Sequence record: KT919973.1
Strand: one strand, 5' to 3'
Length of the DNA: 64,000 bases
The translations under genes and the position numbers were made by a program. Shown one piece after another: positions 28,707-45,399 of this stretch (positions are counted from its first letter, which is position 1; each line of letters begins with the position of its first letter). A model generated the notes under the pieces. That model ran no database searches and was not told the origin of the DNA. It saw only the letters and a program-made list of their open reading frames with translations.

Positions 28707-28733
28707 AAAAAAGGGCGCTATTTGCGCCCTTTT
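28707..28733 (-). terminator. intrinsic terminator
   Basis: GGGCGC AAATA GCGCCC T6 (minus). Confidence 0.85.
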
Positions 28734-29248
28734 GTTTTTTGTTTCTTTGCTTTTCGTTTAGCTCGTCTAAGTTCTTTTCGTTTAGCGATTTTATCTGCTC
28801 TTCGAACTGCGTCGTAATCAGCAGCACAAGACGCAGCAAACGCATCAGGTTTGAACACGGGCTCTTGACCAACATATCCCAATATAGTACCTTTAGCTTC
28901 GTTATAGGCAACGTGAGATTTGTGTGTAGGGTCAGGGTTGATGTCAACGTGAACTTCAAAGCCTCTAGTACCGCACATTGGCTTAACCATTAGTGCAGTT
29001 TCACCCGCTTTGTATACTTCATTCATCAATCGACTTCTGATACCATCTTTACATGATAAGTATGCAGGTTCAGTCTCAACTGCTTTAAACACTTGAGCAC
29101 CTTTACTACCTTCAAGATGAATTATGATCACAGTCGCGTAACTAATCATGTCACTTTTACGCTTACTATCACACCCAACGTATATTGTGCTATTTGGATG
29201 ACTGTTATTGATAGCTGTTTCTATCGCTTCCCAATCGAACATTTTCAC
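28718..29248 (-). CDS. RNase H-like protein (YkuK/DUF458 family)
   Basis: IYVGCDS, RLMNEV, EVHVDIN, KPDAFAASCAAD. Confidence 0.85.
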   Translation of the reverse strand: MKMFDWEAIETAINNSHPNSTIYVGCDSKRKSDMISYATVIIIHLEGSKGAQVFKAVETEPAYLSCKDGIRSRLMNEVYKAGETALMVKPMCGTRGFEVHVDINPDPTHKSHVAYNEAKGTILGYVGQEPVFKPDAFAASCAADYDAVRRADKIAKRKELRRAKRKAKKQKTKGRK

Positions 29249-29291: not shown

Positions 29292-30728
29292 TTAAAAGCT
29301 GTAGCGTTCGACGCCTACAGTTTTCATCATGATCTTGACTGGCTCAAGCTCACCACCCAACAGTGAAGTCAAGATAGATGGGCTACAACCAGATACCAGT
29401 GCAGTACCCGCTTCGCCAGCTTTAACCGGAACGTTGCCAAGACGACCACGAATGTTCCAGAAGACCAGTTGTGGCATTTCATAACCAGCACGTGCGTACT
29501 TGGCTTTGATTGCATCGAAGTTCGCAGGTTCACCACGACCGTACCATCCACCACCAGTGTTTGCTTGATCGAATTCCATGTCACTCATGATAAGCAACTT
29601 GGTTGGCATATCTTCTTGTGAAAGATTTGCACGCTTCGCACGTTCTAACAGAACATCAAAGCACTTACCGATGTTCGTGCTCATGTCTTCGCCTGAACGA
29701 TTCATGTTATCAAGACGCTCTTTCAATGAAGAGCCGCGCAACTGGTGGAAGTGCGGGTCGCTTGAGAACGAAATGAACTGATCTTTGAAGATGCCTTCAT
29801 TGCGTTCAGCAACATAAATCCCAAGAGACATTGCAACTTGCTTACAAGTCACACCTGAACGGTCTGTACCTGCGTTAATTGGCGTGCTCATAGAGCCAGA
29901 CACGTCAACAACAGGGATGATGCGTTCATCAGAACCTTCCATGTAGTTTGGCAGAGCTTTCCATTGCTCGTTCGCTACAGACGCATTACCGTGACTAACG
30001 CTCTTAACGACATCGTATGGGAACAATGCGCCAGCGTTGATCTTCGCTTCACCTTTTTGAAGTGACTCGATGTAGTTTGTGTAACGTGTTGAAGCGTTAC
30101 GACCGAATGCTTGTTGATAACGAGCAGACGCTACAGAAGGCAACTTACCGAAGTCGATTGCATCCCATTTTTGCGCACACATCTTCTGCTCAACAGTGTC
30201 AGACAGAAGCGACAGAATCTTACGCCACTGCTTCGCAGTTACGCCAAGAGACTTGATTGTGCGCTTGAACACATGACCGTTTTTGCTGTTTTCACGTGGG
30301 AACCACTTCGCAGCAAGACCATTCTTGTCATTGACAATTGCGTTCGACCACATTGTAATCGCATCTTTTTCAAGACGTGTACCGAAAGCAGAAATCAAGT
30401 CATCGTAACGACCTAGTTCTGGAATTTTCGACATTACAGCACGAGCTACGTCAGGCTGTTCATTACAAAGTTTAGTGAATAGAGTACGGAAAGTACCACG
30501 TTCACCCGCACCACCGCGAACATCACGAGACCACAAAAGAATGCGTGTCGCTAGTTCTGGGTTTTCTGCAAACGCACGACCGAACAGAGTTTTAGACTGA
30601 TCGTTACCACGCATAGCAGCAATACCGAAGAACAAGTTTAGACACTCGTTACCTGAAGTGCTGTGAGTAACTGCACCGTTTGCTGTACGTGAATCGTTTG
30701 ATTGCATAGCTGACATAAATGCTGACAT
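29292..30728 (-). CDS. DUF2828 plus vWA protein (Ro60/TROVE-like RNA-binding protein)
   Basis: TANGA..H.TS, RDVRGGAGER, GRYDDL, AAKWFPRE, DVSGSMS MIDAS, SDMEFD, VFWN. Confidence 0.85.
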   Translation of the reverse strand: MSAFMSAMQSNDSRTANGAVTHSTSGNECLNLFFGIAAMRGNDQSKTLFGRAFAENPELATRILLWSRDVRGGAGERGTFRTLFTKLCNEQPDVARAVMSKIPELGRYDDLISAFGTRLEKDAITMWSNAIVNDKNGLAAKWFPRENSKNGHVFKRTIKSLGVTAKQWRKILSLLSDTVEQKMCAQKWDAIDFGKLPSVASARYQQAFGRNASTRYTNYIESLQKGEAKINAGALFPYDVVKSVSHGNASVANEQWKALPNYMEGSDERIIPVVDVSGSMSTPINAGTDRSGVTCKQVAMSLGIYVAERNEGIFKDQFISFSSDPHFHQLRGSSLKERLDNMNRSGEDMSTNIGKCFDVLLERAKRANLSQEDMPTKLLIMSDMEFDQANTGGGWYGRGEPANFDAIKAKYARAGYEMPQLVFWNIRGRLGNVPVKAGEAGTALVSGCSPSILTSLLGGELEPVKIMMKTVGVERYSF

Positions 30729-30763
30729 TGTTATTTCCTCATATTAAATTGCTGTAAAATGTC
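30724..30763 (-). promoter_or_regulatory. leader hairpin GACATT/AATGTC burying the ATG, with TACAGCAA motif in the loop
   Basis: minus strand GACATT TTACAGCAATTTAATATGAGGAAATAAC AATGTC; the ATG lies in the 3-prime arm. Confidence 0.7.
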
Positions 30764-31469: not shown

Positions 31470-31834
31470 AGATATTCCTTAATATCTTTTGAAAAGTGAC
31501 GAATACATGAACTATCAAGACGTTTACGACCATCACCGTCAATATCAGGTAATGTGTACCCATCATTGAATGGCTGACCGCTTGATTTAGCGATTTCGTA
31601 TGCATCACTTCGATTGAAATATTCACCGCAGTAATTGATGAAACCTTGACCACGATCACCAAGCTCGTTACGATGCTCATATGTACAGCCAAGTTCTTTC
31701 AATAGCTTAAACACGCCTTGCATGTTTCGTCCGAAATGACAGCTATCTGCGACTACGATCTCTCGCTGCTCACCATTCGGCATAGTCACTCGAATCGCAT
31801 TAGCAGCACAAGAAATTACATTTACGTGCGACAT
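31466..31834 (-). CDS. conserved phage hypothetical protein
   Basis: H...QGFIN..GEYF.R.DAY.IAK.SGQ pattern common in phages. Confidence 0.75.
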   Translation of the reverse strand: MSHVNVISCAANAIRVTMPNGEQREIVVADSCHFGRNMQGVFKLLKELGCTYEHRNELGDRGQGFINYCGEYFNRSDAYEIAKSSGQPFNDGYTLPDIDGDGRKRLDSSCIRHFSKDIKEYL

Positions 31835-32184
31835 GTATCGTACCTCATAAAAATAGAACCAACACGTTTGTATTGATTAGAATACATTAACAGTTTTGTC
31901 ATTTTGTTGTGAGCAACAGGGTTGCTTGTTACAAGAACGACAGTTCGTGGGTAATTGCGTTGGTCGATGGCATGTGATAGAATATCATAACCCTCTCGAC
32001 CGACAGCATCACCTAAATCATTGTCCATGAAAAGTGTAATGTCAGTAAGATTCGTATACTTGACGAATTTCATGCCGTCGTCGAATGTACGAATCACACG
32101 CTTTTCATCGTCTAGAATATTTGGTTTAGTGAACTTATTAATGTCACGTAAGTCATCAATCATTACAAACATAGTATTTCTCAT
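31822..32184 (-). CDS. cyclic-phosphate-processing receiver domain protein
   Basis: MIDDLRD, LFMDNDLG, GYDIL, TSNPV receiver-like motifs. Confidence 0.8.
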   Translation of the reverse strand: MRNTMFVMIDDLRDINKFTKPNILDDEKRVIRTFDDGMKFVKYTNLTDITLFMDNDLGDAVGREGYDILSHAIDQRNYPRTVVLVTSNPVAHNKMTKLLMYSNQYKRVGSIFMRYDTCRT

Positions 32185-41864: not shown

Positions 41865-41980
41865 TGGTAGTCGGGGCTGGATTCGAACCAGCGACCACGT
41901 GCTTAACAGGCAATTGAAGGAGTGCTGGAGCGATACTTGTCAGTATCATTCTTCGTGCTCTACCACTGAGCTACCCGACT
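41865..41980 (-). ncRNA. tRNA-Asn(GTT)-derived RNA with a 41-nt insertion in the anticodon stem
   Basis: removing AAGAATGATACTGACAAGTATCGCTCCAGCACTCCTTCAAT restores a perfect 75-nt tRNA-Asn with CCA. Confidence 0.8.
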
Positions 41981-43521: not shown

Positions 43522-43537
43522 AAAACCCTCGAAATTT

Positions 43538-43656
43538 GGGAGAGTACGGGATTTGAACCACGTGACCAAAAGATTTACCTAGTTAAGGGTTGCAGAATGA
43601 ATGCTTATCAGAATTCTTTAACATTCTTTTGCTCTACCAGACTGAGCTAACTCTCC
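43538..43656 (-). ncRNA. tRNA-like RNA C with about 50-nt anticodon-loop insertion carrying ATTCTGCAA
   Basis: GGAGAGT/ACTCTCC, GCTC-AGTCTGGTA-GAGC, AAAGA/TCTTT, TTCAAAT T loop; no standard N73-CCA. Confidence 0.7.
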
Positions 43657-43661
43657 GTTAT

Positions 43662-43764
43662 CTACTTTGTTTCGCTTGTCAGGGCGCCGAAACGCTACCT
43701 AACCAAGGATTCGAACCTTTTAACCAACACCTCGCGAAAATTATTTTTCTCGTTGGCAAAGTAG
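43662..43764 (-). ncRNA. 103-nt multi-branch RNA with a T-arm mimic
   Basis: CTACTTTG/CAAAGTAG, CCAAC/GTTGG, AAGG-TTCGAAT-CCTT, GTTTCG/CGAAAC. Confidence 0.6.
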
Positions 43765-43770
43765 TAAAAA

Positions 43771-43907
43771 CATATTGAGCAGGGTGCAGGATTCGAACCT
43801 GCGTCACGATCTTGGAAATGATATGCTAAATTGATTGCAGAATACAAACTTAACAGCTTGCGTTTATGCTACGTGTGCTAGCCACTACACCAACCCTGCT
43901 CAATATG
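43771..43907 (-). ncRNA. tRNA-like RNA B with anticodon-arm insertion carrying ATTCTGCAAT
   Basis: 15-bp extended acceptor CATATTGAGCAGGGT/ACCCTGCTCAATATG, D arm, GCAGG-TTCGAAT-CCTGC. Confidence 0.75.
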
Positions 43908-44146
43908 TTCTTGAGAGTGCTTGTGGTTAATCACAAGCACCAAAAATCCTCTAGTTTATTTTGCCTTAGCTAATCAACACAACCTGAAATCGTGCGCTTT
44001 ATTTACGGGATGAATGACCCGTTCGCATATGATTAGCGCAAAAGTATGAATGCGCACCTTTTCTTCTTCAATGTCCAAGGCAAAGAGGACGATGAATACT
44101 AGTGCGAGAAGATATACAATCAAATTGTTCACCTCGCTTGATAAGT

Positions 44147-44293
44147 GAGAGTACATTGGTCGAGTGTAACGGAATCGAACCGTTCCCACGATCTCCCTAT
44201 GATATGCGTAAATTGGTTGCTGAATATAATCATGTCTGATTACAGTATGCTACGTGTGCTGCCACTACACCAACACTCGACCAATATACTCTC
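44147..44293 (-). ncRNA. tRNA-like RNA A (mature about 44157-44279) with insertion carrying ATTCAGCAAC
   Basis: CGAGTGT/ACACTCG-A-CCA, D arm nearly identical to RNA B, AACGG-TTCGATT-CCGTT, 21-bp precursor stem. Confidence 0.78.
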
Positions 44294-44559: not shown

Positions 44560-44587
44560 ATCTTAACATCATTTCAGTGTAAGTCAA
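44560..44587 (-). promoter_or_regulatory. sigma70-type promoter for the pseudoknot/tRNA-like operon
   Basis: TTGACT-16bp-TAAGAT with TGn extension and upstream A-tract. Confidence 0.75.
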
Positions 44588-44600
44588 CAACTTTTTCAAA

Positions 44601-44650
44601 TATTTCATCGAGTTGAAAGTTTGTGTTCTGTCTCTCGACTCGATGAAATA
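44601..44650 (-). ncRNA. 50-nt hairpin RNA behind its own promoter
   Basis: 13-bp stem TATTTCATCGAGT/ACTCGATGAAATA. Confidence 0.5.
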
Positions 44651-44651
44651 C

Positions 44652-44679
44652 ATTCTACATGCTTTTCAGAATAAGTCAA
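44652..44679 (-). promoter_or_regulatory. sigma70-type promoter (paralogue of 44560-44587)
   Basis: AAAAAGTTGTTGACTTA shared; TTGACT-16bp-TAGAAT. Confidence 0.75.
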
Positions 44680-44696: not shown

Positions 44697-44951
44697 TTAT
44701 ACTGAAAGAATGATACCGCTTTCTGTCTCACCTCGTTCAAGCGCAGCGTGCTTGATTTGAAGCTGAGATACAGCTTGCTGAAGCTCAGTGATAGCTTTGT
44801 CGTAAAGTTTGTTGTTCTCTTTAAGTAAAGCAATCTGATCGGTCTGCATACCGATGATATACGTCAATAATACAACGTTCTCTTCAGTAGTTAGAGTTTC
44901 GGGAGCTTCATTGTACTTCTTTAATACTGCTTCAGTAGATAAATCAGTCAT
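44697..44951 (-). CDS. coiled-coil hypothetical protein
   Basis: ATG 44951 coupled to the 57B stop. Confidence 0.75.
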   Translation of the reverse strand: MTDLSTEAVLKKYNEAPETLTTEENVVLLTYIIGMQTDQIALLKENNKLYDKAITELQQAVSQLQIKHAALERGETESGIILSV

Positions 44952-45399
44952 TACTATCAACCCAATTTAAATCAAGTGGTTCAAGATATTCATCAACAAG
45001 CCGAACTTCAGCGTTGACGGGCATAGGTGTGATCGCGTCGTCATAAGACAACGTAACGTGAGGGGTATAGTCAGGGTAGTCGTGAGTACCACCGATAGAG
45101 ATAAGATCATCGTGACGTTCTACAAGTTCTGGACATACCATCTTAGCAACAACTGCATATTTGCCGTCTTGCGTTTTCCAACAGTCGATATGTTCAACAG
45201 TAGCAACGAAAGTGGTATCGACAACAGGTACATCAATTTGCTTACGACTATAAAGCACAGTCACGTGAAATTTATCTGGTTCTAACGGATTTTTTAGACG
45301 AAGCGTTTTCTGCAATCGAACTAACTCTTGCTTACTCGCCTCGTCTAATCTGATACCAACGTAAGTTCCCTGACTTTCAAGGAACTTAGATAGTTTCAT
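44944..45399 (-). CDS. 57B: gp57B / Acb1 anti-CBASS 2H phosphoesterase
   Basis: two HxT motifs (FHVTVLYSRK, YTPHVTLSY); T4 synteny 57B-57A-1-3. Confidence 0.9.
   Translation of the reverse strand: MKLSKFLESQGTYVGIRLDEASKQELVRLQKTLRLKNPLEPDKFHVTVLYSRKQIDVPVVDTTFVATVEHIDCWKTQDGKYAVVAKMVCPELVERHDDLISIGGTHDYPDYTPHVTLSYDDAITPMPVNAEVRLVDEYLEPLDLNWVDSND

What the first reader, a model, noticed from the sequence alone, without database searches (positions are those of the whole stretch)
43771..44293. Two paralogous tRNA-shaped RNAs (A and B) with large anticodon-arm insertions and very long precursor stems
Seen: both read TGGTGTAGTGGC(T)AGCACACGTAGCATA...ATTC(A/T)GCAA(C/T)CAATTTA(C)GCATATCAT...AGATCGTG, followed by a normal T arm. 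Their acceptor stems differ but are fully paired (covariation) and extend to 15-21 bp. A ends in A-CCA; B does not. The inserts keep anticodon-loop-like heptamers CTGTAAT (A) and CTGTTAA (B). Inference: aminoacylatable or elbow-mimicking scaffolds that carry the Ro-like binding motif. Standard tRNA finders would miss them or call them pseudogenes.
Basis: partly seen in the sequence, partly recalled or inferred. Interest (0 to 1): 0.75.

Follow-up and report, generated by a model that had tools for sequence, protein, structure and literature searches.

The report
Phage tRNA-shaped partners of Ro-like protein
Two conserved tRNA-shaped RNAs of a Vibrio phage carry a structured extra arm with a CNGCAA motif that recurs next to a Ro60-like ring-protein gene in unrelated phages, so they are probably this phage's version of Y RNAs.

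Summary
The window is Vibrio phage phi-ST2 (KVP40-like). A (44293..44147, minus strand) and B (43912..43766) are paralogous tRNA-shaped RNAs with covarying 21- and 20-bp terminal helices. A encodes ACCA; B does not.

The anatomy needs correcting. Both keep a canonical anticodon-like hairpin. A 49-nt insert splits the 5' strand of the anticodon stem between nt 28 and 29. It holds a covarying hairpin capped by a GNNA tetraloop, followed by an invariant CNGCAA.

My covariance model finds 81 distinct relatives, including window elements D (41980..41865) and, weakly, C (43656..43535). They occur in vibriophages, Aeromonas phages, a cyanophage and metagenomic viruses. A narrow subtype scan of 185,579 species genomes gave only two small MAG contigs.

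The window also encodes a DUF2828+vWA protein (29292..30728) whose model matches Ro60/TROVE structures. In at least five viral lineages these RNAs lie 0.1-1.3 kb from that gene, on the same strand. ACAGCAA beside a stem also flanks the gene in Felix O1, P100, CP30A and mycobacteriophage Lumos, where Rfam YrlA gives a sub-threshold hit.

Best explanation (0.5): tRNA-embedded, circularly permuted Y-RNA analogues that dock the phage Ro-like protein. No binding or expression was measured.

The parts
44147..44293 (-). Element A, whole: tRNA-Pro-like cloverleaf plus a 14-bp leader/trailer extension (21-bp terminal helix)
   Evidence: Covariance model R1 scores 125.9 bits. Annotated as a tRNA-OTHER pseudogene in phi-ST2.
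44157..44279 (-). A core (nt 1-76): acceptor C1-G72, D arm, split anticodon arm, 4-nt variable loop, T arm (44184..44168), ACCA (44160..44157)
44204..44252 (-). A insert (49 nt) between anticodon-stem nt 28 and 29: A-rich linker, hairpin 44244..44225 with a GACA tetraloop, then CAGCAA at 44222..44217
   Evidence: The hairpin covaries across the family.
44189..44203 (-). A anticodon-like hairpin, nt 29-43: 3-bp upper stem, 7-nt loop AUAGGGA (44200..44194), then C42 G43, which pair with C27 G28 at 44254..44253
43766..43912 (-). Element B, whole: tRNA-Gly-like cloverleaf (U73) plus a 13-bp extension (20-bp terminal helix); no CCA (UCAA)
   Evidence: R1 scores 127.2 bits. Annotated 'tRNA-Cys'.
43823..43871 (-). 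B insert (49 nt): hairpin 43861..43844 with a GUUA tetraloop, then CUGCAA at 43840..43835
43807..43822 (-). B anticodon-like hairpin with an 8-nt loop AUUUCCAA (43819..43812)
41865..41980 (-). Element D: third family member (GUU loop CUGUUAA, ACCA end, no extension); insert 41953..41913 with hairpin 41948..41931 and motif variant CAGCAC
   Evidence: R1 scores 75.2 bits. Rfam tRNA 49.8 bits with a 54-nt insert.
43535..43656 (-). Element C: divergent relative. The full 5-bp stem AAAGA/UCUUU encloses the module (motif CUGCAA at 43595..43590)
   Evidence: R1 scores 38.5 bits, close to ordinary tRNAs, which reach 36.6 bits. Rfam tRNA 49 bits with a 46-nt insert.
29292..30728 (-). Ro60-like protein gene (478 aa; DUF2828 + vWA/DUF7788), the proposed protein partner; an ACAGCAA lies 27 nt upstream of its start codon, at 30755..30749
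   Evidence: Pfam 2.3e-29 and 1.6e-46; PHROG 850 'RNA-binding protein' 5.8e-173. Foldseek top hits are TROVE/Ro60 structures.
44560..44679 (-). Two sigma-70-like promoters upstream of A (TTGACT-16-TAGAAT at 44679..44652; TTGACT-16-TAAGAT at 44587..44560)
   Evidence: These are consensus matches only.

Best explanation
A and B, with their window paralogues D and probably C, are stable tRNA-derived noncoding RNAs. They belong to a virus-restricted family in which a complete tRNA cloverleaf carries an extra structured arm. I propose that this arm is the docking site for the phage's own Ro60-like ring protein (ORF 29292..30728), which would make these RNAs the functional equivalent of bacterial YrlA-type Y RNAs.

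Shown:
- The fold, its covariation and the family's distribution.
- The Ro60-like fold of the protein (a moderate-confidence model).
- The genomic linkage between the RNA and the protein gene.
- The recurrence of the motif beside this gene family in unrelated phages.

Inferred:
- The RNAs are transcribed with the tRNA array from early-type promoters.
- The 20-21-bp leader/trailer helix of A and B is a processing or stabilising stalk. It is long enough for RNase III and it buries the 3' end.
- The Ro-like protein recognises CNGCAA lying directly 3' of a helix strand. This would parallel the way classical Ro60 uses GNCGAA in the Y RNA stem.
- The tRNA body then presents a tRNA-shaped handle to tRNA-handling enzymes or nucleases. 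The ribonucleoprotein would act in quality control, repair or protection of tRNAs during infection.

Read around the circle, the order is helix, motif, T arm, acceptor, D arm, helix. This order is the same in the YrlA-like RNA of mycobacteriophage Lumos and in A and B. The window RNAs are therefore circular permutations of a Y RNA. The Y RNA's terminal stem is closed by a tetraloop, the ends are opened at the acceptor, and an anticodon hairpin is retained.
For: Structure:
- In 63 of 81 distinct members a perfect 5-bp anticodon stem is split after nt 28 by a 38-58-nt insert.
- The insert hairpin and the cloverleaf covary strongly.
- Hairpin plus CNGCA occurs almost only in these tRNA-like contexts among 325 kb scanned.

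Protein:
- The window ORF matches DUF2828 + DUF7788.
- Its model's best whole-length PDB matches are a TROVE domain (E 2.6e-7), Thermus phage phiLo Ro60 (4e-7) and Xenopus Ro60.
- Homologues occur in 711 phage records, including 56 Vibrio. Some are annotated 'Ro-like RNA binding protein'.

Linkage:
- Family RNAs lie 0.1-1.3 kb from this gene on the same strand in cyanophage BUCT-ZZ01 and four further metagenomic lineages.
- The distance is 2.2 kb in Aeromonas phage PX29.

Motif:
- ACAGCAA directly after a stem strand recurs in noncoding DNA beside the gene in Felix O1 (4 copies), P100 (3), CP30A (2) and Lumos (3). About 0.1 is expected per locus.
- In Lumos it sits inside an Rfam YrlA match (39.3 bits, E 2.4e-5).

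Controls:
- The classical-TROVE phage Bxz1 has GNCGAA and no CNGCAA beside its Ro gene.
- The T4 tRNA region has no CNGCAA.

Precedent:
- Bacterial and phage Ro60 proteins pair with tRNA-like Y RNAs encoded within 4 kb on the same strand (PMC4201824).
- Phage phiLo Ro60 binds phage-encoded Y-like RNAs and host PNPase in vitro (PMC12135203).
Against: - No binding, expression or processing data exist for any member.
- In the window itself the Ro-like gene is 11-15 kb from A-D. It is on the same strand but not adjacent.
- The gene family is often next to tRNA arrays in general (Felix O1, P100, CP30A). Some of the linkage could therefore reflect shared residence in a tRNA island.
- No family member was found near the gene in Felix O1, P100, CP30A, Lumos or Serratia BF. 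Serratia BF shows no motif either.
- The protein model is only moderately confident (pLDDT 68, built from 6 sequences).
- CNGCAA never varies, so covariation cannot show what it contacts.
- The anticodon loops obey tRNA rules very well. G37 follows G36 in 18 of 18 loops and follows any other base in 0 of 27. UGG/AGG loops go with G72/A73. This hints at selection for genuine tRNA functions that the model does not require.
Confidence: 0.5

Rival explanations
1. They are working tRNAs. Either the extra arm is retained, for example to shield the anticodon stem from host tRNA nucleases, or the 49-nt insert is removed as a protein- or ribozyme-spliced intron to give ordinary tRNAs.
For: - The anticodon hairpin is canonical. 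Of 45 seven-nt loops, 41 have U33 and 43 have R37.
- G37 appears only after G36.
- Pro-type anticodons go with G72/A73. Several UCC loops go with U73 and several GUC loops with G73.
- 23 of 63 members encode CCA.
- C-type relatives carry the module at a position resembling the canonical 37/38 intron site.
- KVP40-type phages encode a CCA-adding enzyme (PMC3468402).
Against: - Close orthologues change the anticodon while keeping the same acceptor and discriminator. A is AGG or UAG. B is UUCC, UCAU, UCU or UCA.
- 16 of 63 members have 8-nt loops.
- No bulge-helix-bulge can form, because the exon strands flanking the insert are not contiguous (my reading of the sequence).
- The insert is far too short for a group I intron.
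- ARAGORN's intron mode gives mutually inconsistent, non-canonical solutions.
- In A and B the 3' end is paired in a 20-21-bp helix.
- The phage already has ordinary Pro, Gly and Asn tRNAs.
- The neighbouring 2H-phosphoesterase gene is Acb1 (anti-CBASS), not a tRNA ligase.
Confidence: 0.15
2. They are decoys or sponges for host tRNA-targeting defence nucleases or other tRNA-binding factors, and act independently of the Ro-like protein.
For: - The tRNA body is mimicked well, while the anticodon triplets are variable or non-cognate. Each phage carries several paralogues with different loops.
- Phage tRNAs are known to counter Septu and retron effectors that cut tRNA-Tyr (PMC13096335).
- The genes lie downstream of early-type promoters.
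Against: - It does not explain the invariant insert hairpin and CNGCAA.
- It does not explain their recurrence beside the Ro-like gene in unrelated phages.
- No nuclease target is known.
Confidence: 0.15
3. They are decaying tRNA pseudogenes disrupted by a small selfish insertion, as the KVP40 annotation implies.
For: - Annotated as tRNA pseudogenes in KVP40 and phi-ST2.
- The anticodons drift between orthologues.
Against: - Compensatory changes maintain every helix, including the insert hairpin and the 13-14-bp extensions, from vibriophages to cyanophages.
- A is 97-100% identical in 30 vibriophage records, while the 1.3-kb region around it is only 88-97% identical in many of the same phages.
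Confidence: 0.03

Closest known systems
YrlA-type bacterial and phage Y RNAs (Rfam RF02553), partners of Ro60/Rsr
   Same: - tRNA-like D and T arms form an elbow.
- They are encoded on the same strand near a Ro60-fold ring+vWA protein gene.
- A short conserved purine-rich motif sits beside a helix.
- Phages often carry several copies.
- The cyclic order of elements is the same.
   Different: - The ends are at a true acceptor stem, so the RNA is circularly permuted.
- A full anticodon hairpin is kept.
- The motif is CNGCAA, not GNCGAA.
- The protein belongs to the DUF2828 branch, not Pfam TROVE.
- The YrlA model does not match A or B.
Thermus phage phiLo Ro60 with Yrl1/Yrl2 (PMC12135203)
   Same: A phage-encoded Ro60-fold protein with phage-encoded small RNA partners next to the gene. 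It is the second-best structural match of the window protein's model.
   Different: - The phiLo RNAs are simple stem-bulge-stem RNAs with a CGAA motif.
- Binding has been shown for phiLo and not here.
Phage T4 stable RNAs rnaC and rnaD (species 1 and 2)
   Same: RNAs of 120-140 nt and unknown role, encoded within the tRNA cluster of a T4-type phage near genes 1, 3 and 57B. rnaC has a T arm and an acceptor-like stem.
   Different: - No detectable homology (R1 gives 14 bits, E 0.12).
- No canonical GG D loop was apparent on reading rnaC.
- No CNGCAA in the T4 tRNA region.
Intron-containing tRNAs (archaeal bulge-helix-bulge or bacterial group I)
   Same: An insertion interrupts the anticodon arm. 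Annotation software reports 'introns'.
   Different: - The insert lies at 28/29 in the stem.
- No bulge-helix-bulge can form.
- 49 nt is too short for a group I intron.
- The insert is conserved in sequence and structure across different tRNA bodies.

Membership tests
tRNA (RF00005) | Acceptor stem of 7 bp, D arm with a GG loop, T arm with a GTTCRA loop | tested here: met
   All are present and covary.
tRNA (RF00005) | Contiguous 5-bp anticodon stem with a 7-nt loop; the Rfam model scores at or above 29 bits | tested here: not met
   - The stem is split by a 49-nt insert, and B has an 8-nt loop.
- There is no RF00005 match for A or B even at E up to 10.
- ARAGORN's default mode misses them.
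tRNA (RF00005) | Anticodon conserved among orthologues and cognate with the acceptor identity | tested here: not met
   A is AGG or UAG. B is UUCC, UCAU, UCU or UCA. The discriminator is unchanged in each case.
YrlA / Y RNA | Encoded within a few kb of a Ro60-type gene on the same strand | tested here: inconclusive
   - Window: same strand, but 11-15 kb away.
- Relatives: 0.1-2.2 kb in at least six lineages.
YrlA / Y RNA | tRNA-like D and T arms | tested here: met
YrlA / Y RNA | GNCGAAN0-1G motif in the 5' strand of the terminal stem (PMC4201824) | tested here: not met
   - A has only GGUCGAG and B has none.
- The conserved motif is CNGCAA, which lies in the insert.
YrlA / Y RNA | Match to the Rfam YrlA or Y_RNA models | tested here: not met
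   The only hit is a chimeric 19.5-bit match spanning B's T arm and C's D arm.
YrlA / Y RNA | Physical binding to the Ro-type protein | not testable with these tools
   Needs gel shifts or immunoprecipitation.
Ro60/TROVE proteins (for ORF 29292..30728) | HEAT-repeat ring plus a C-terminal vWA domain | tested here: met
   Whole-length Foldseek matches to 9kop, 9l5y, 2i91 and 1yvr, TM 0.43-0.59. The model has pLDDT 68.
Ro60/TROVE proteins (for ORF 29292..30728) | Match to Pfam TROVE (PF05731) | tested here: not met
   It matches DUF2828 + DUF7788 instead. The Bxz1 Ro60 query finds nothing significant in the window.
Archaeal-type tRNA intron | Bulge-helix-bulge at both splice sites | tested here: not met
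   The exon strands flanking the insert are not contiguous, so the motif cannot form (my reading of the sequence). ARAGORN's intron calls are inconsistent.
T4 rnaC/rnaD | Sequence or structure homology | tested here: not met
   R1 gives 14.1 bits, E 0.12.

The most novel reading that the evidence does not exclude
A widespread and undescribed phage ribonucleoprotein system. DUF2828-type Ro60-like ring proteins, with homologues in 711 phage records from Proteobacteria, Firmicutes, Actinobacteria and Campylobacterota hosts, would recognise an ACAGCAA motif lying next to a helix.

Their RNA partners would range across three forms:
- minimal stem-motif RNAs (Felix O1, P100, CP30A);
- YrlA-like tRNA mimics (Lumos);
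- whole tRNAs with the motif arm grafted into the anticodon stem (KVP40-like and Aeh1-like phages, a cyanophage).

The motif might also mark pre-tRNA 3' trailers. That would tie the system to tRNA maturation, repair or counter-defence during infection.
Probability: 0.4. Interest if true: 0.85.

Novelty: new variant of a known kind. Interest (0 to 1): 0.78.

Why it matters
Y RNAs and Ro60 are a long-standing puzzle. The role of the tRNA-like domain of bacterial Y RNAs is unknown, and no RNA partner turned up in my literature searches for the DUF2828 branch of Ro-like proteins, although its homologues occur in 711 phage records.

If the proposal is right:
- The 'tRNA pseudogenes' of KVP40-type phages become a defined RNA family with a candidate protein partner and a six-base recognition motif that can be mutated.
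- The family gives a natural example of a functional RNA arm displayed on a tRNA scaffold.
- It gives a tractable phage system for asking what Ro-type ribonucleoproteins do to tRNAs during infection.
- It would improve annotation, because these genes are currently called tRNA-Cys, tRNA-Asn, tRNA-Ile, tRNA-Leu or pseudogenes.

Tried and rejected
- Rfam at the gathering and E-value thresholds found no family for A or B.
- ARAGORN's intron mode gave arbitrary calls: SeC for A, Trp for B, Tyr for C and Ile for D, at positions 33/34, 30/31, 34/35 and 37/38.
- I first read the insert hairpin loop as anticodon-like. I rejected this because the closing U-A pair swaps to A-U, the two middle bases vary freely between orthologues, and the stem register gives a tetraloop rather than a 7-nt loop.
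- Pairing of GUAGC with GCAAY was rejected. The motif stays constant while the 5' partner changes.
- A closing helix for the insert (GUAG/CUAC type) is visible in one clade. Overall it is no better than shuffled controls, with a mean best helix of 3.44 against 3.49.
- gp57B as a tRNA ligase was rejected. It is Acb1.
- A classical TROVE Ro60 query found only 1 Vibrio record among 356 phage hits.
- No scaffold closely matches a particular window tRNA.
- T4 rnaC and rnaD are not homologous.
- The KVP40 genome paper, the RNA-repair paper of Burroughs and Aravind, and the Y RNA review were not held in the library.
- My literature searches found no description of this RNA family.

Full report
**Identity of the window.** The 1.3 kb around the finding is 100% identical to Vibrio phage phi-ST2, a KVP40-like Schizotequatrovirus. 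About 50 vibriophage records are related. The minus strand carries a tRNA array: ARAGORN finds 26 tRNAs between 36.2 and 43.2 kb. Upstream of it lie homologues of T4 genes 3, 1 and 57B. In GenBank, element A is a 'tRNA-OTHER' pseudogene and B is 'tRNA-Cys'. Two further long genes are called tRNA-Asn (C, 43656..43535) and tRNA-Ile (D, 41980..41865). KVP40 lists the long tRNA-like genes of this region as tRNA pseudogenes.

**Checking the observation.**
- A has a 7-bp acceptor (C1-G72) continued by 14 more pairs between leader and trailer. That gives 21 bp, and the pairing includes the encoded ACCA.
- B has 7 + 13 = 20 bp and ends UCAA.
- Both fold far better than shuffles, with z-scores of -4.3 and -4.6.
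- The extension covaries between phages. In 81 relatives it is either 0-2 bp (67 cases) or 12-15 bp (14 cases: the vibriophage A/B clade and one metagenomic virus). It is therefore a discrete feature of that clade.
- ARAGORN's default mode and the Rfam tRNA model miss A and B.

**A family, not a pair.** BLAST finds A and B orthologues in KVP40-like and oyster-associated vibriophages, and a partial match in Synechococcus phage BUCT-ZZ01.
- Pattern scans of viral and metagenome contigs added many more.
- The same narrow subtype pattern, run over one genome from each of 185,579 prokaryotic species, gave only two small MAG contigs.
- A covariance model built from 18 sequences found 108 matches, 81 of them distinct.
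- The window holds four members: A at 125.9 bits, B at 127.2, D at 75.2 and C at 38.5. C is marginal, because ordinary tRNAs reach up to 36.6 bits.
- On the 81 sequences, 97% of structure cells are paired, against 61% in shuffles and 34-54% with slid partners. 24 of 25 pairs show changes on both sides. That alignment is fitted to the model, so the slid control is the fairer yardstick.

**Corrected anatomy.** The insert is not in the anticodon loop.
- After the D stem come N26 and C27 G28, then an insert of 38-58 nt (49 nt in A and B).
- After the insert come three bases, a 7- or 8-nt loop and three complementary bases. C42 G43 follow and pair with C27 G28. A 4-5-nt variable loop and the T arm complete the molecule.
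- 63 of the 81 sequences form this perfect split 5-bp stem.
- Compensatory variants of the 27-28/42-43 pairs exist (CC/GG).
- The loops obey tRNA rules. Of 45 seven-nt loops, 41 have U33 and 43 have a purine at 37. G37 follows G36 in 18 of 18 loops and follows any other base in 0 of 27.
- All 15 UGG or AGG loops have G72 or A72, and 14 of them have A73. G72 with A73 is the bacterial tRNA-Pro signature, from established knowledge.
- A is Pro-like (loop AUAGGGA, C1-G72, A73). B is Gly-like (loop AUUUCCAA, U73). D carries CUGUUAA.
- Close orthologues nevertheless change the triplet while keeping the acceptor. A is AGG or UAG. B is UUCC, UCAU, UCU or UCA. 16 of the 63 loops have 8 nt. Decoding therefore does not look conserved.

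**The insert.** It holds a hairpin of 5-8 bp whose stem covaries freely.
- Its top is conserved as C-U-GNNA-A-G.
- The U-A pair becomes A-U in A, and the two middle bases vary between orthologues. It is therefore a GNNA tetraloop and not an anticodon.
- Two to five bases after the hairpin comes an invariant C-N-G-C-A-A.
- Among 325 kb of collected loci, hairpin plus CNGCA occurred almost exclusively in these tRNA-like contexts.
- I could not establish a closing helix for the insert.
- C-type relatives keep a full 5-bp stem and carry the module inside it.
- ARAGORN's intron mode gives inconsistent answers. No bulge-helix-bulge is possible, by my reading of the sequence.

**The protein lead.** In cyanophage BUCT-ZZ01 the gene immediately upstream of two family members matches Pfam DUF2828 plus DUF7788, a vWA domain. 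The same is true in a metagenomic contig.
- The window encodes a homologue at 29292..30728 on the same strand (478 aa; DUF7788 1.6e-46, DUF2828 2.3e-29; PHROG 850 'RNA-binding protein').
- An AlphaFold model from a six-sequence alignment is only moderately confident (pLDDT 68). Even so, its best whole-length PDB matches are a TROVE domain (E 2.6e-7), Thermus phage phiLo Ro60 (4e-7) and Xenopus Ro60.
- Homologues occur in 711 phage records, 56 of them Vibrio, and some are annotated 'Ro-like RNA binding protein'.
- A classical TROVE Ro60 query (Bxz1 gp220) found only 1 Vibrio record among 356 phage hits, whereas about 50 KVP40-like records carry A.
- Neighbouring genes hint at RNA-end chemistry. 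In the window these are an RNase H-like protein (PF04308) and a cyclic-phosphate-processing receiver domain. In Listeria phage P100 an annotated tRNA splicing ligase lies 1.3 kb downstream. In Serratia phage BF an RNA ligase and a CCA-adding enzyme flank the gene.

**Linkage.** Family RNAs lie 0.1-1.3 kb from the Ro-like gene, on the same strand, in five lineages:
- BUCT-ZZ01;
- L161/L163/L200;
- L155/L189;
- L162/L176;
- L167.

In L162/L176 and L167 the RNA is the pattern match itself, a divergent member that did not reach the covariance-model cut-off. The distance is 2.2 kb in Aeromonas phage PX29, which has three tandem members, 8 kb in L181, and 11-15 kb in the window. PX29-type elements occur in 13 Aeromonas phage records. 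One caveat applies: the gene often sits beside tRNA arrays in any case (Felix O1, P100, CP30A).

**The motif beyond this family.** Mycobacteriophage Lumos has an Rfam YrlA match (39.3 bits, E 2.4e-5, below the gathering score) 130 nt downstream of its DUF2828 gene.
- That region holds three units, each a stem whose 5' strand is directly followed by ACAGCAA.
- The same arrangement appears four times downstream of the gene in Felix O1, three times upstream in P100 and twice upstream in CP30A. It appears once in the window, 27 nt before the Ro-like start codon. About 0.1 occurrence is expected per locus.
- Controls: Bxz1 has the canonical GNCGAA and no CNGCAA next to its classical Ro60 gene. The T4 tRNA region has no CNGCAA.
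- Read around the circle, Lumos YrlA-like RNA and A/B share the order helix, motif, T arm, acceptor, D arm, helix. A and B therefore look like circularly permuted Y RNAs with real tRNA ends.

**Interpretation.** The fold, the family and the Ro-like protein are shown by tool results. The partnership is inferred from linkage and from motif recurrence. It fits published precedent: tRNA-like Y RNAs are encoded beside Ro60 genes (PMC4201824), and phiLo Ro60 binds phage Y-like RNAs and host PNPase (PMC12135203).
- I put 0.5 on the Ro-partner model.
- I put 0.15 on working or spliced tRNAs.
- I put 0.15 on Ro-independent decoys.
- I put 0.03 on dead pseudogenes.
- The remainder is unassigned.

The long terminal helix of A and B is best read as a processing or stabilising stalk. 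That is inference only.

**Novelty.** Phage Y-like RNAs and Ro60 are known. My literature searches found no description of three things: the DUF2828 branch having RNA partners, a CNGCAA/ACAGCAA motif, and a tRNA-embedded permuted form. I therefore rate this a new variant of a known kind.

Noticed in passing
window 36242, 38964, 39355, 40146 (minus strand): Four of the 26 ordinary tRNAs have a CNGCAA motif 15-21 nt after their 3' CCA, where about 1 is expected. The flanks are similar (uaCAGCAAacaau). Felix O1 shows the same between its tRNAs. The motif may mark pre-tRNA trailers for the Ro-like protein.
   Followed up: partly
window 30749..30755 (minus strand): An ACAGCAA lies 27 nt upstream of the start codon of the Ro-like gene. 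This could be an autoregulatory site.
   Followed up: no
window 44944..45399 (minus strand): The gp57B homologue just upstream of A matches Pfam Acb1, the anti-CBASS 2H phosphodiesterase (E 8e-46). It is a counter-defence gene, not a tRNA ligase.
   Followed up: yes
window 28718..29248 and 31822..32184 (minus strand): Two genes flank the Ro-like gene: an RNase H-like protein (PF04308, 4e-17) and a cyclic-phosphate-processing receiver domain (PF20274, 2.8e-14). Together they may form an RNA-end-processing neighbourhood.
   Followed up: partly
window 43690..43745 (minus strand), between B and C: An isolated T-arm-like hairpin (GGUUCGAAUCC loop) sits here with no acceptor or D arm. It looks like a tRNA fragment.
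   Followed up: no
L213 (Aeromonas phage PX29) 6560..6662: Right after gp57B, at the position syntenic with A, lies a 103-nt tRNA-like gene. It has a leader/trailer extension but a different, long-hairpin insert without the CNGCAA module.
   Followed up: no
L214 (Listeria phage P100) 2489..3040: A ROOL RNA (Rfam, 86 bits, E 4.5e-16) lies 1 kb upstream of the DUF2828 Ro-like gene, among tRNAs and three ACAGCAA stem units.
   Followed up: no
L155 and L189, about 300 nt between the family RNA and the Ro-like gene: A conserved noncoding stretch is shared by two metagenomic contigs. It may be another structured RNA.
   Followed up: no
window 43977..44120 (minus strand), between A and B: A 47-codon GTG-initiated ORF encodes a hydrophobic peptide. 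A 9-bp hairpin follows at about 43920..43945, just before B. No Pfam match was found.
   Followed up: partly
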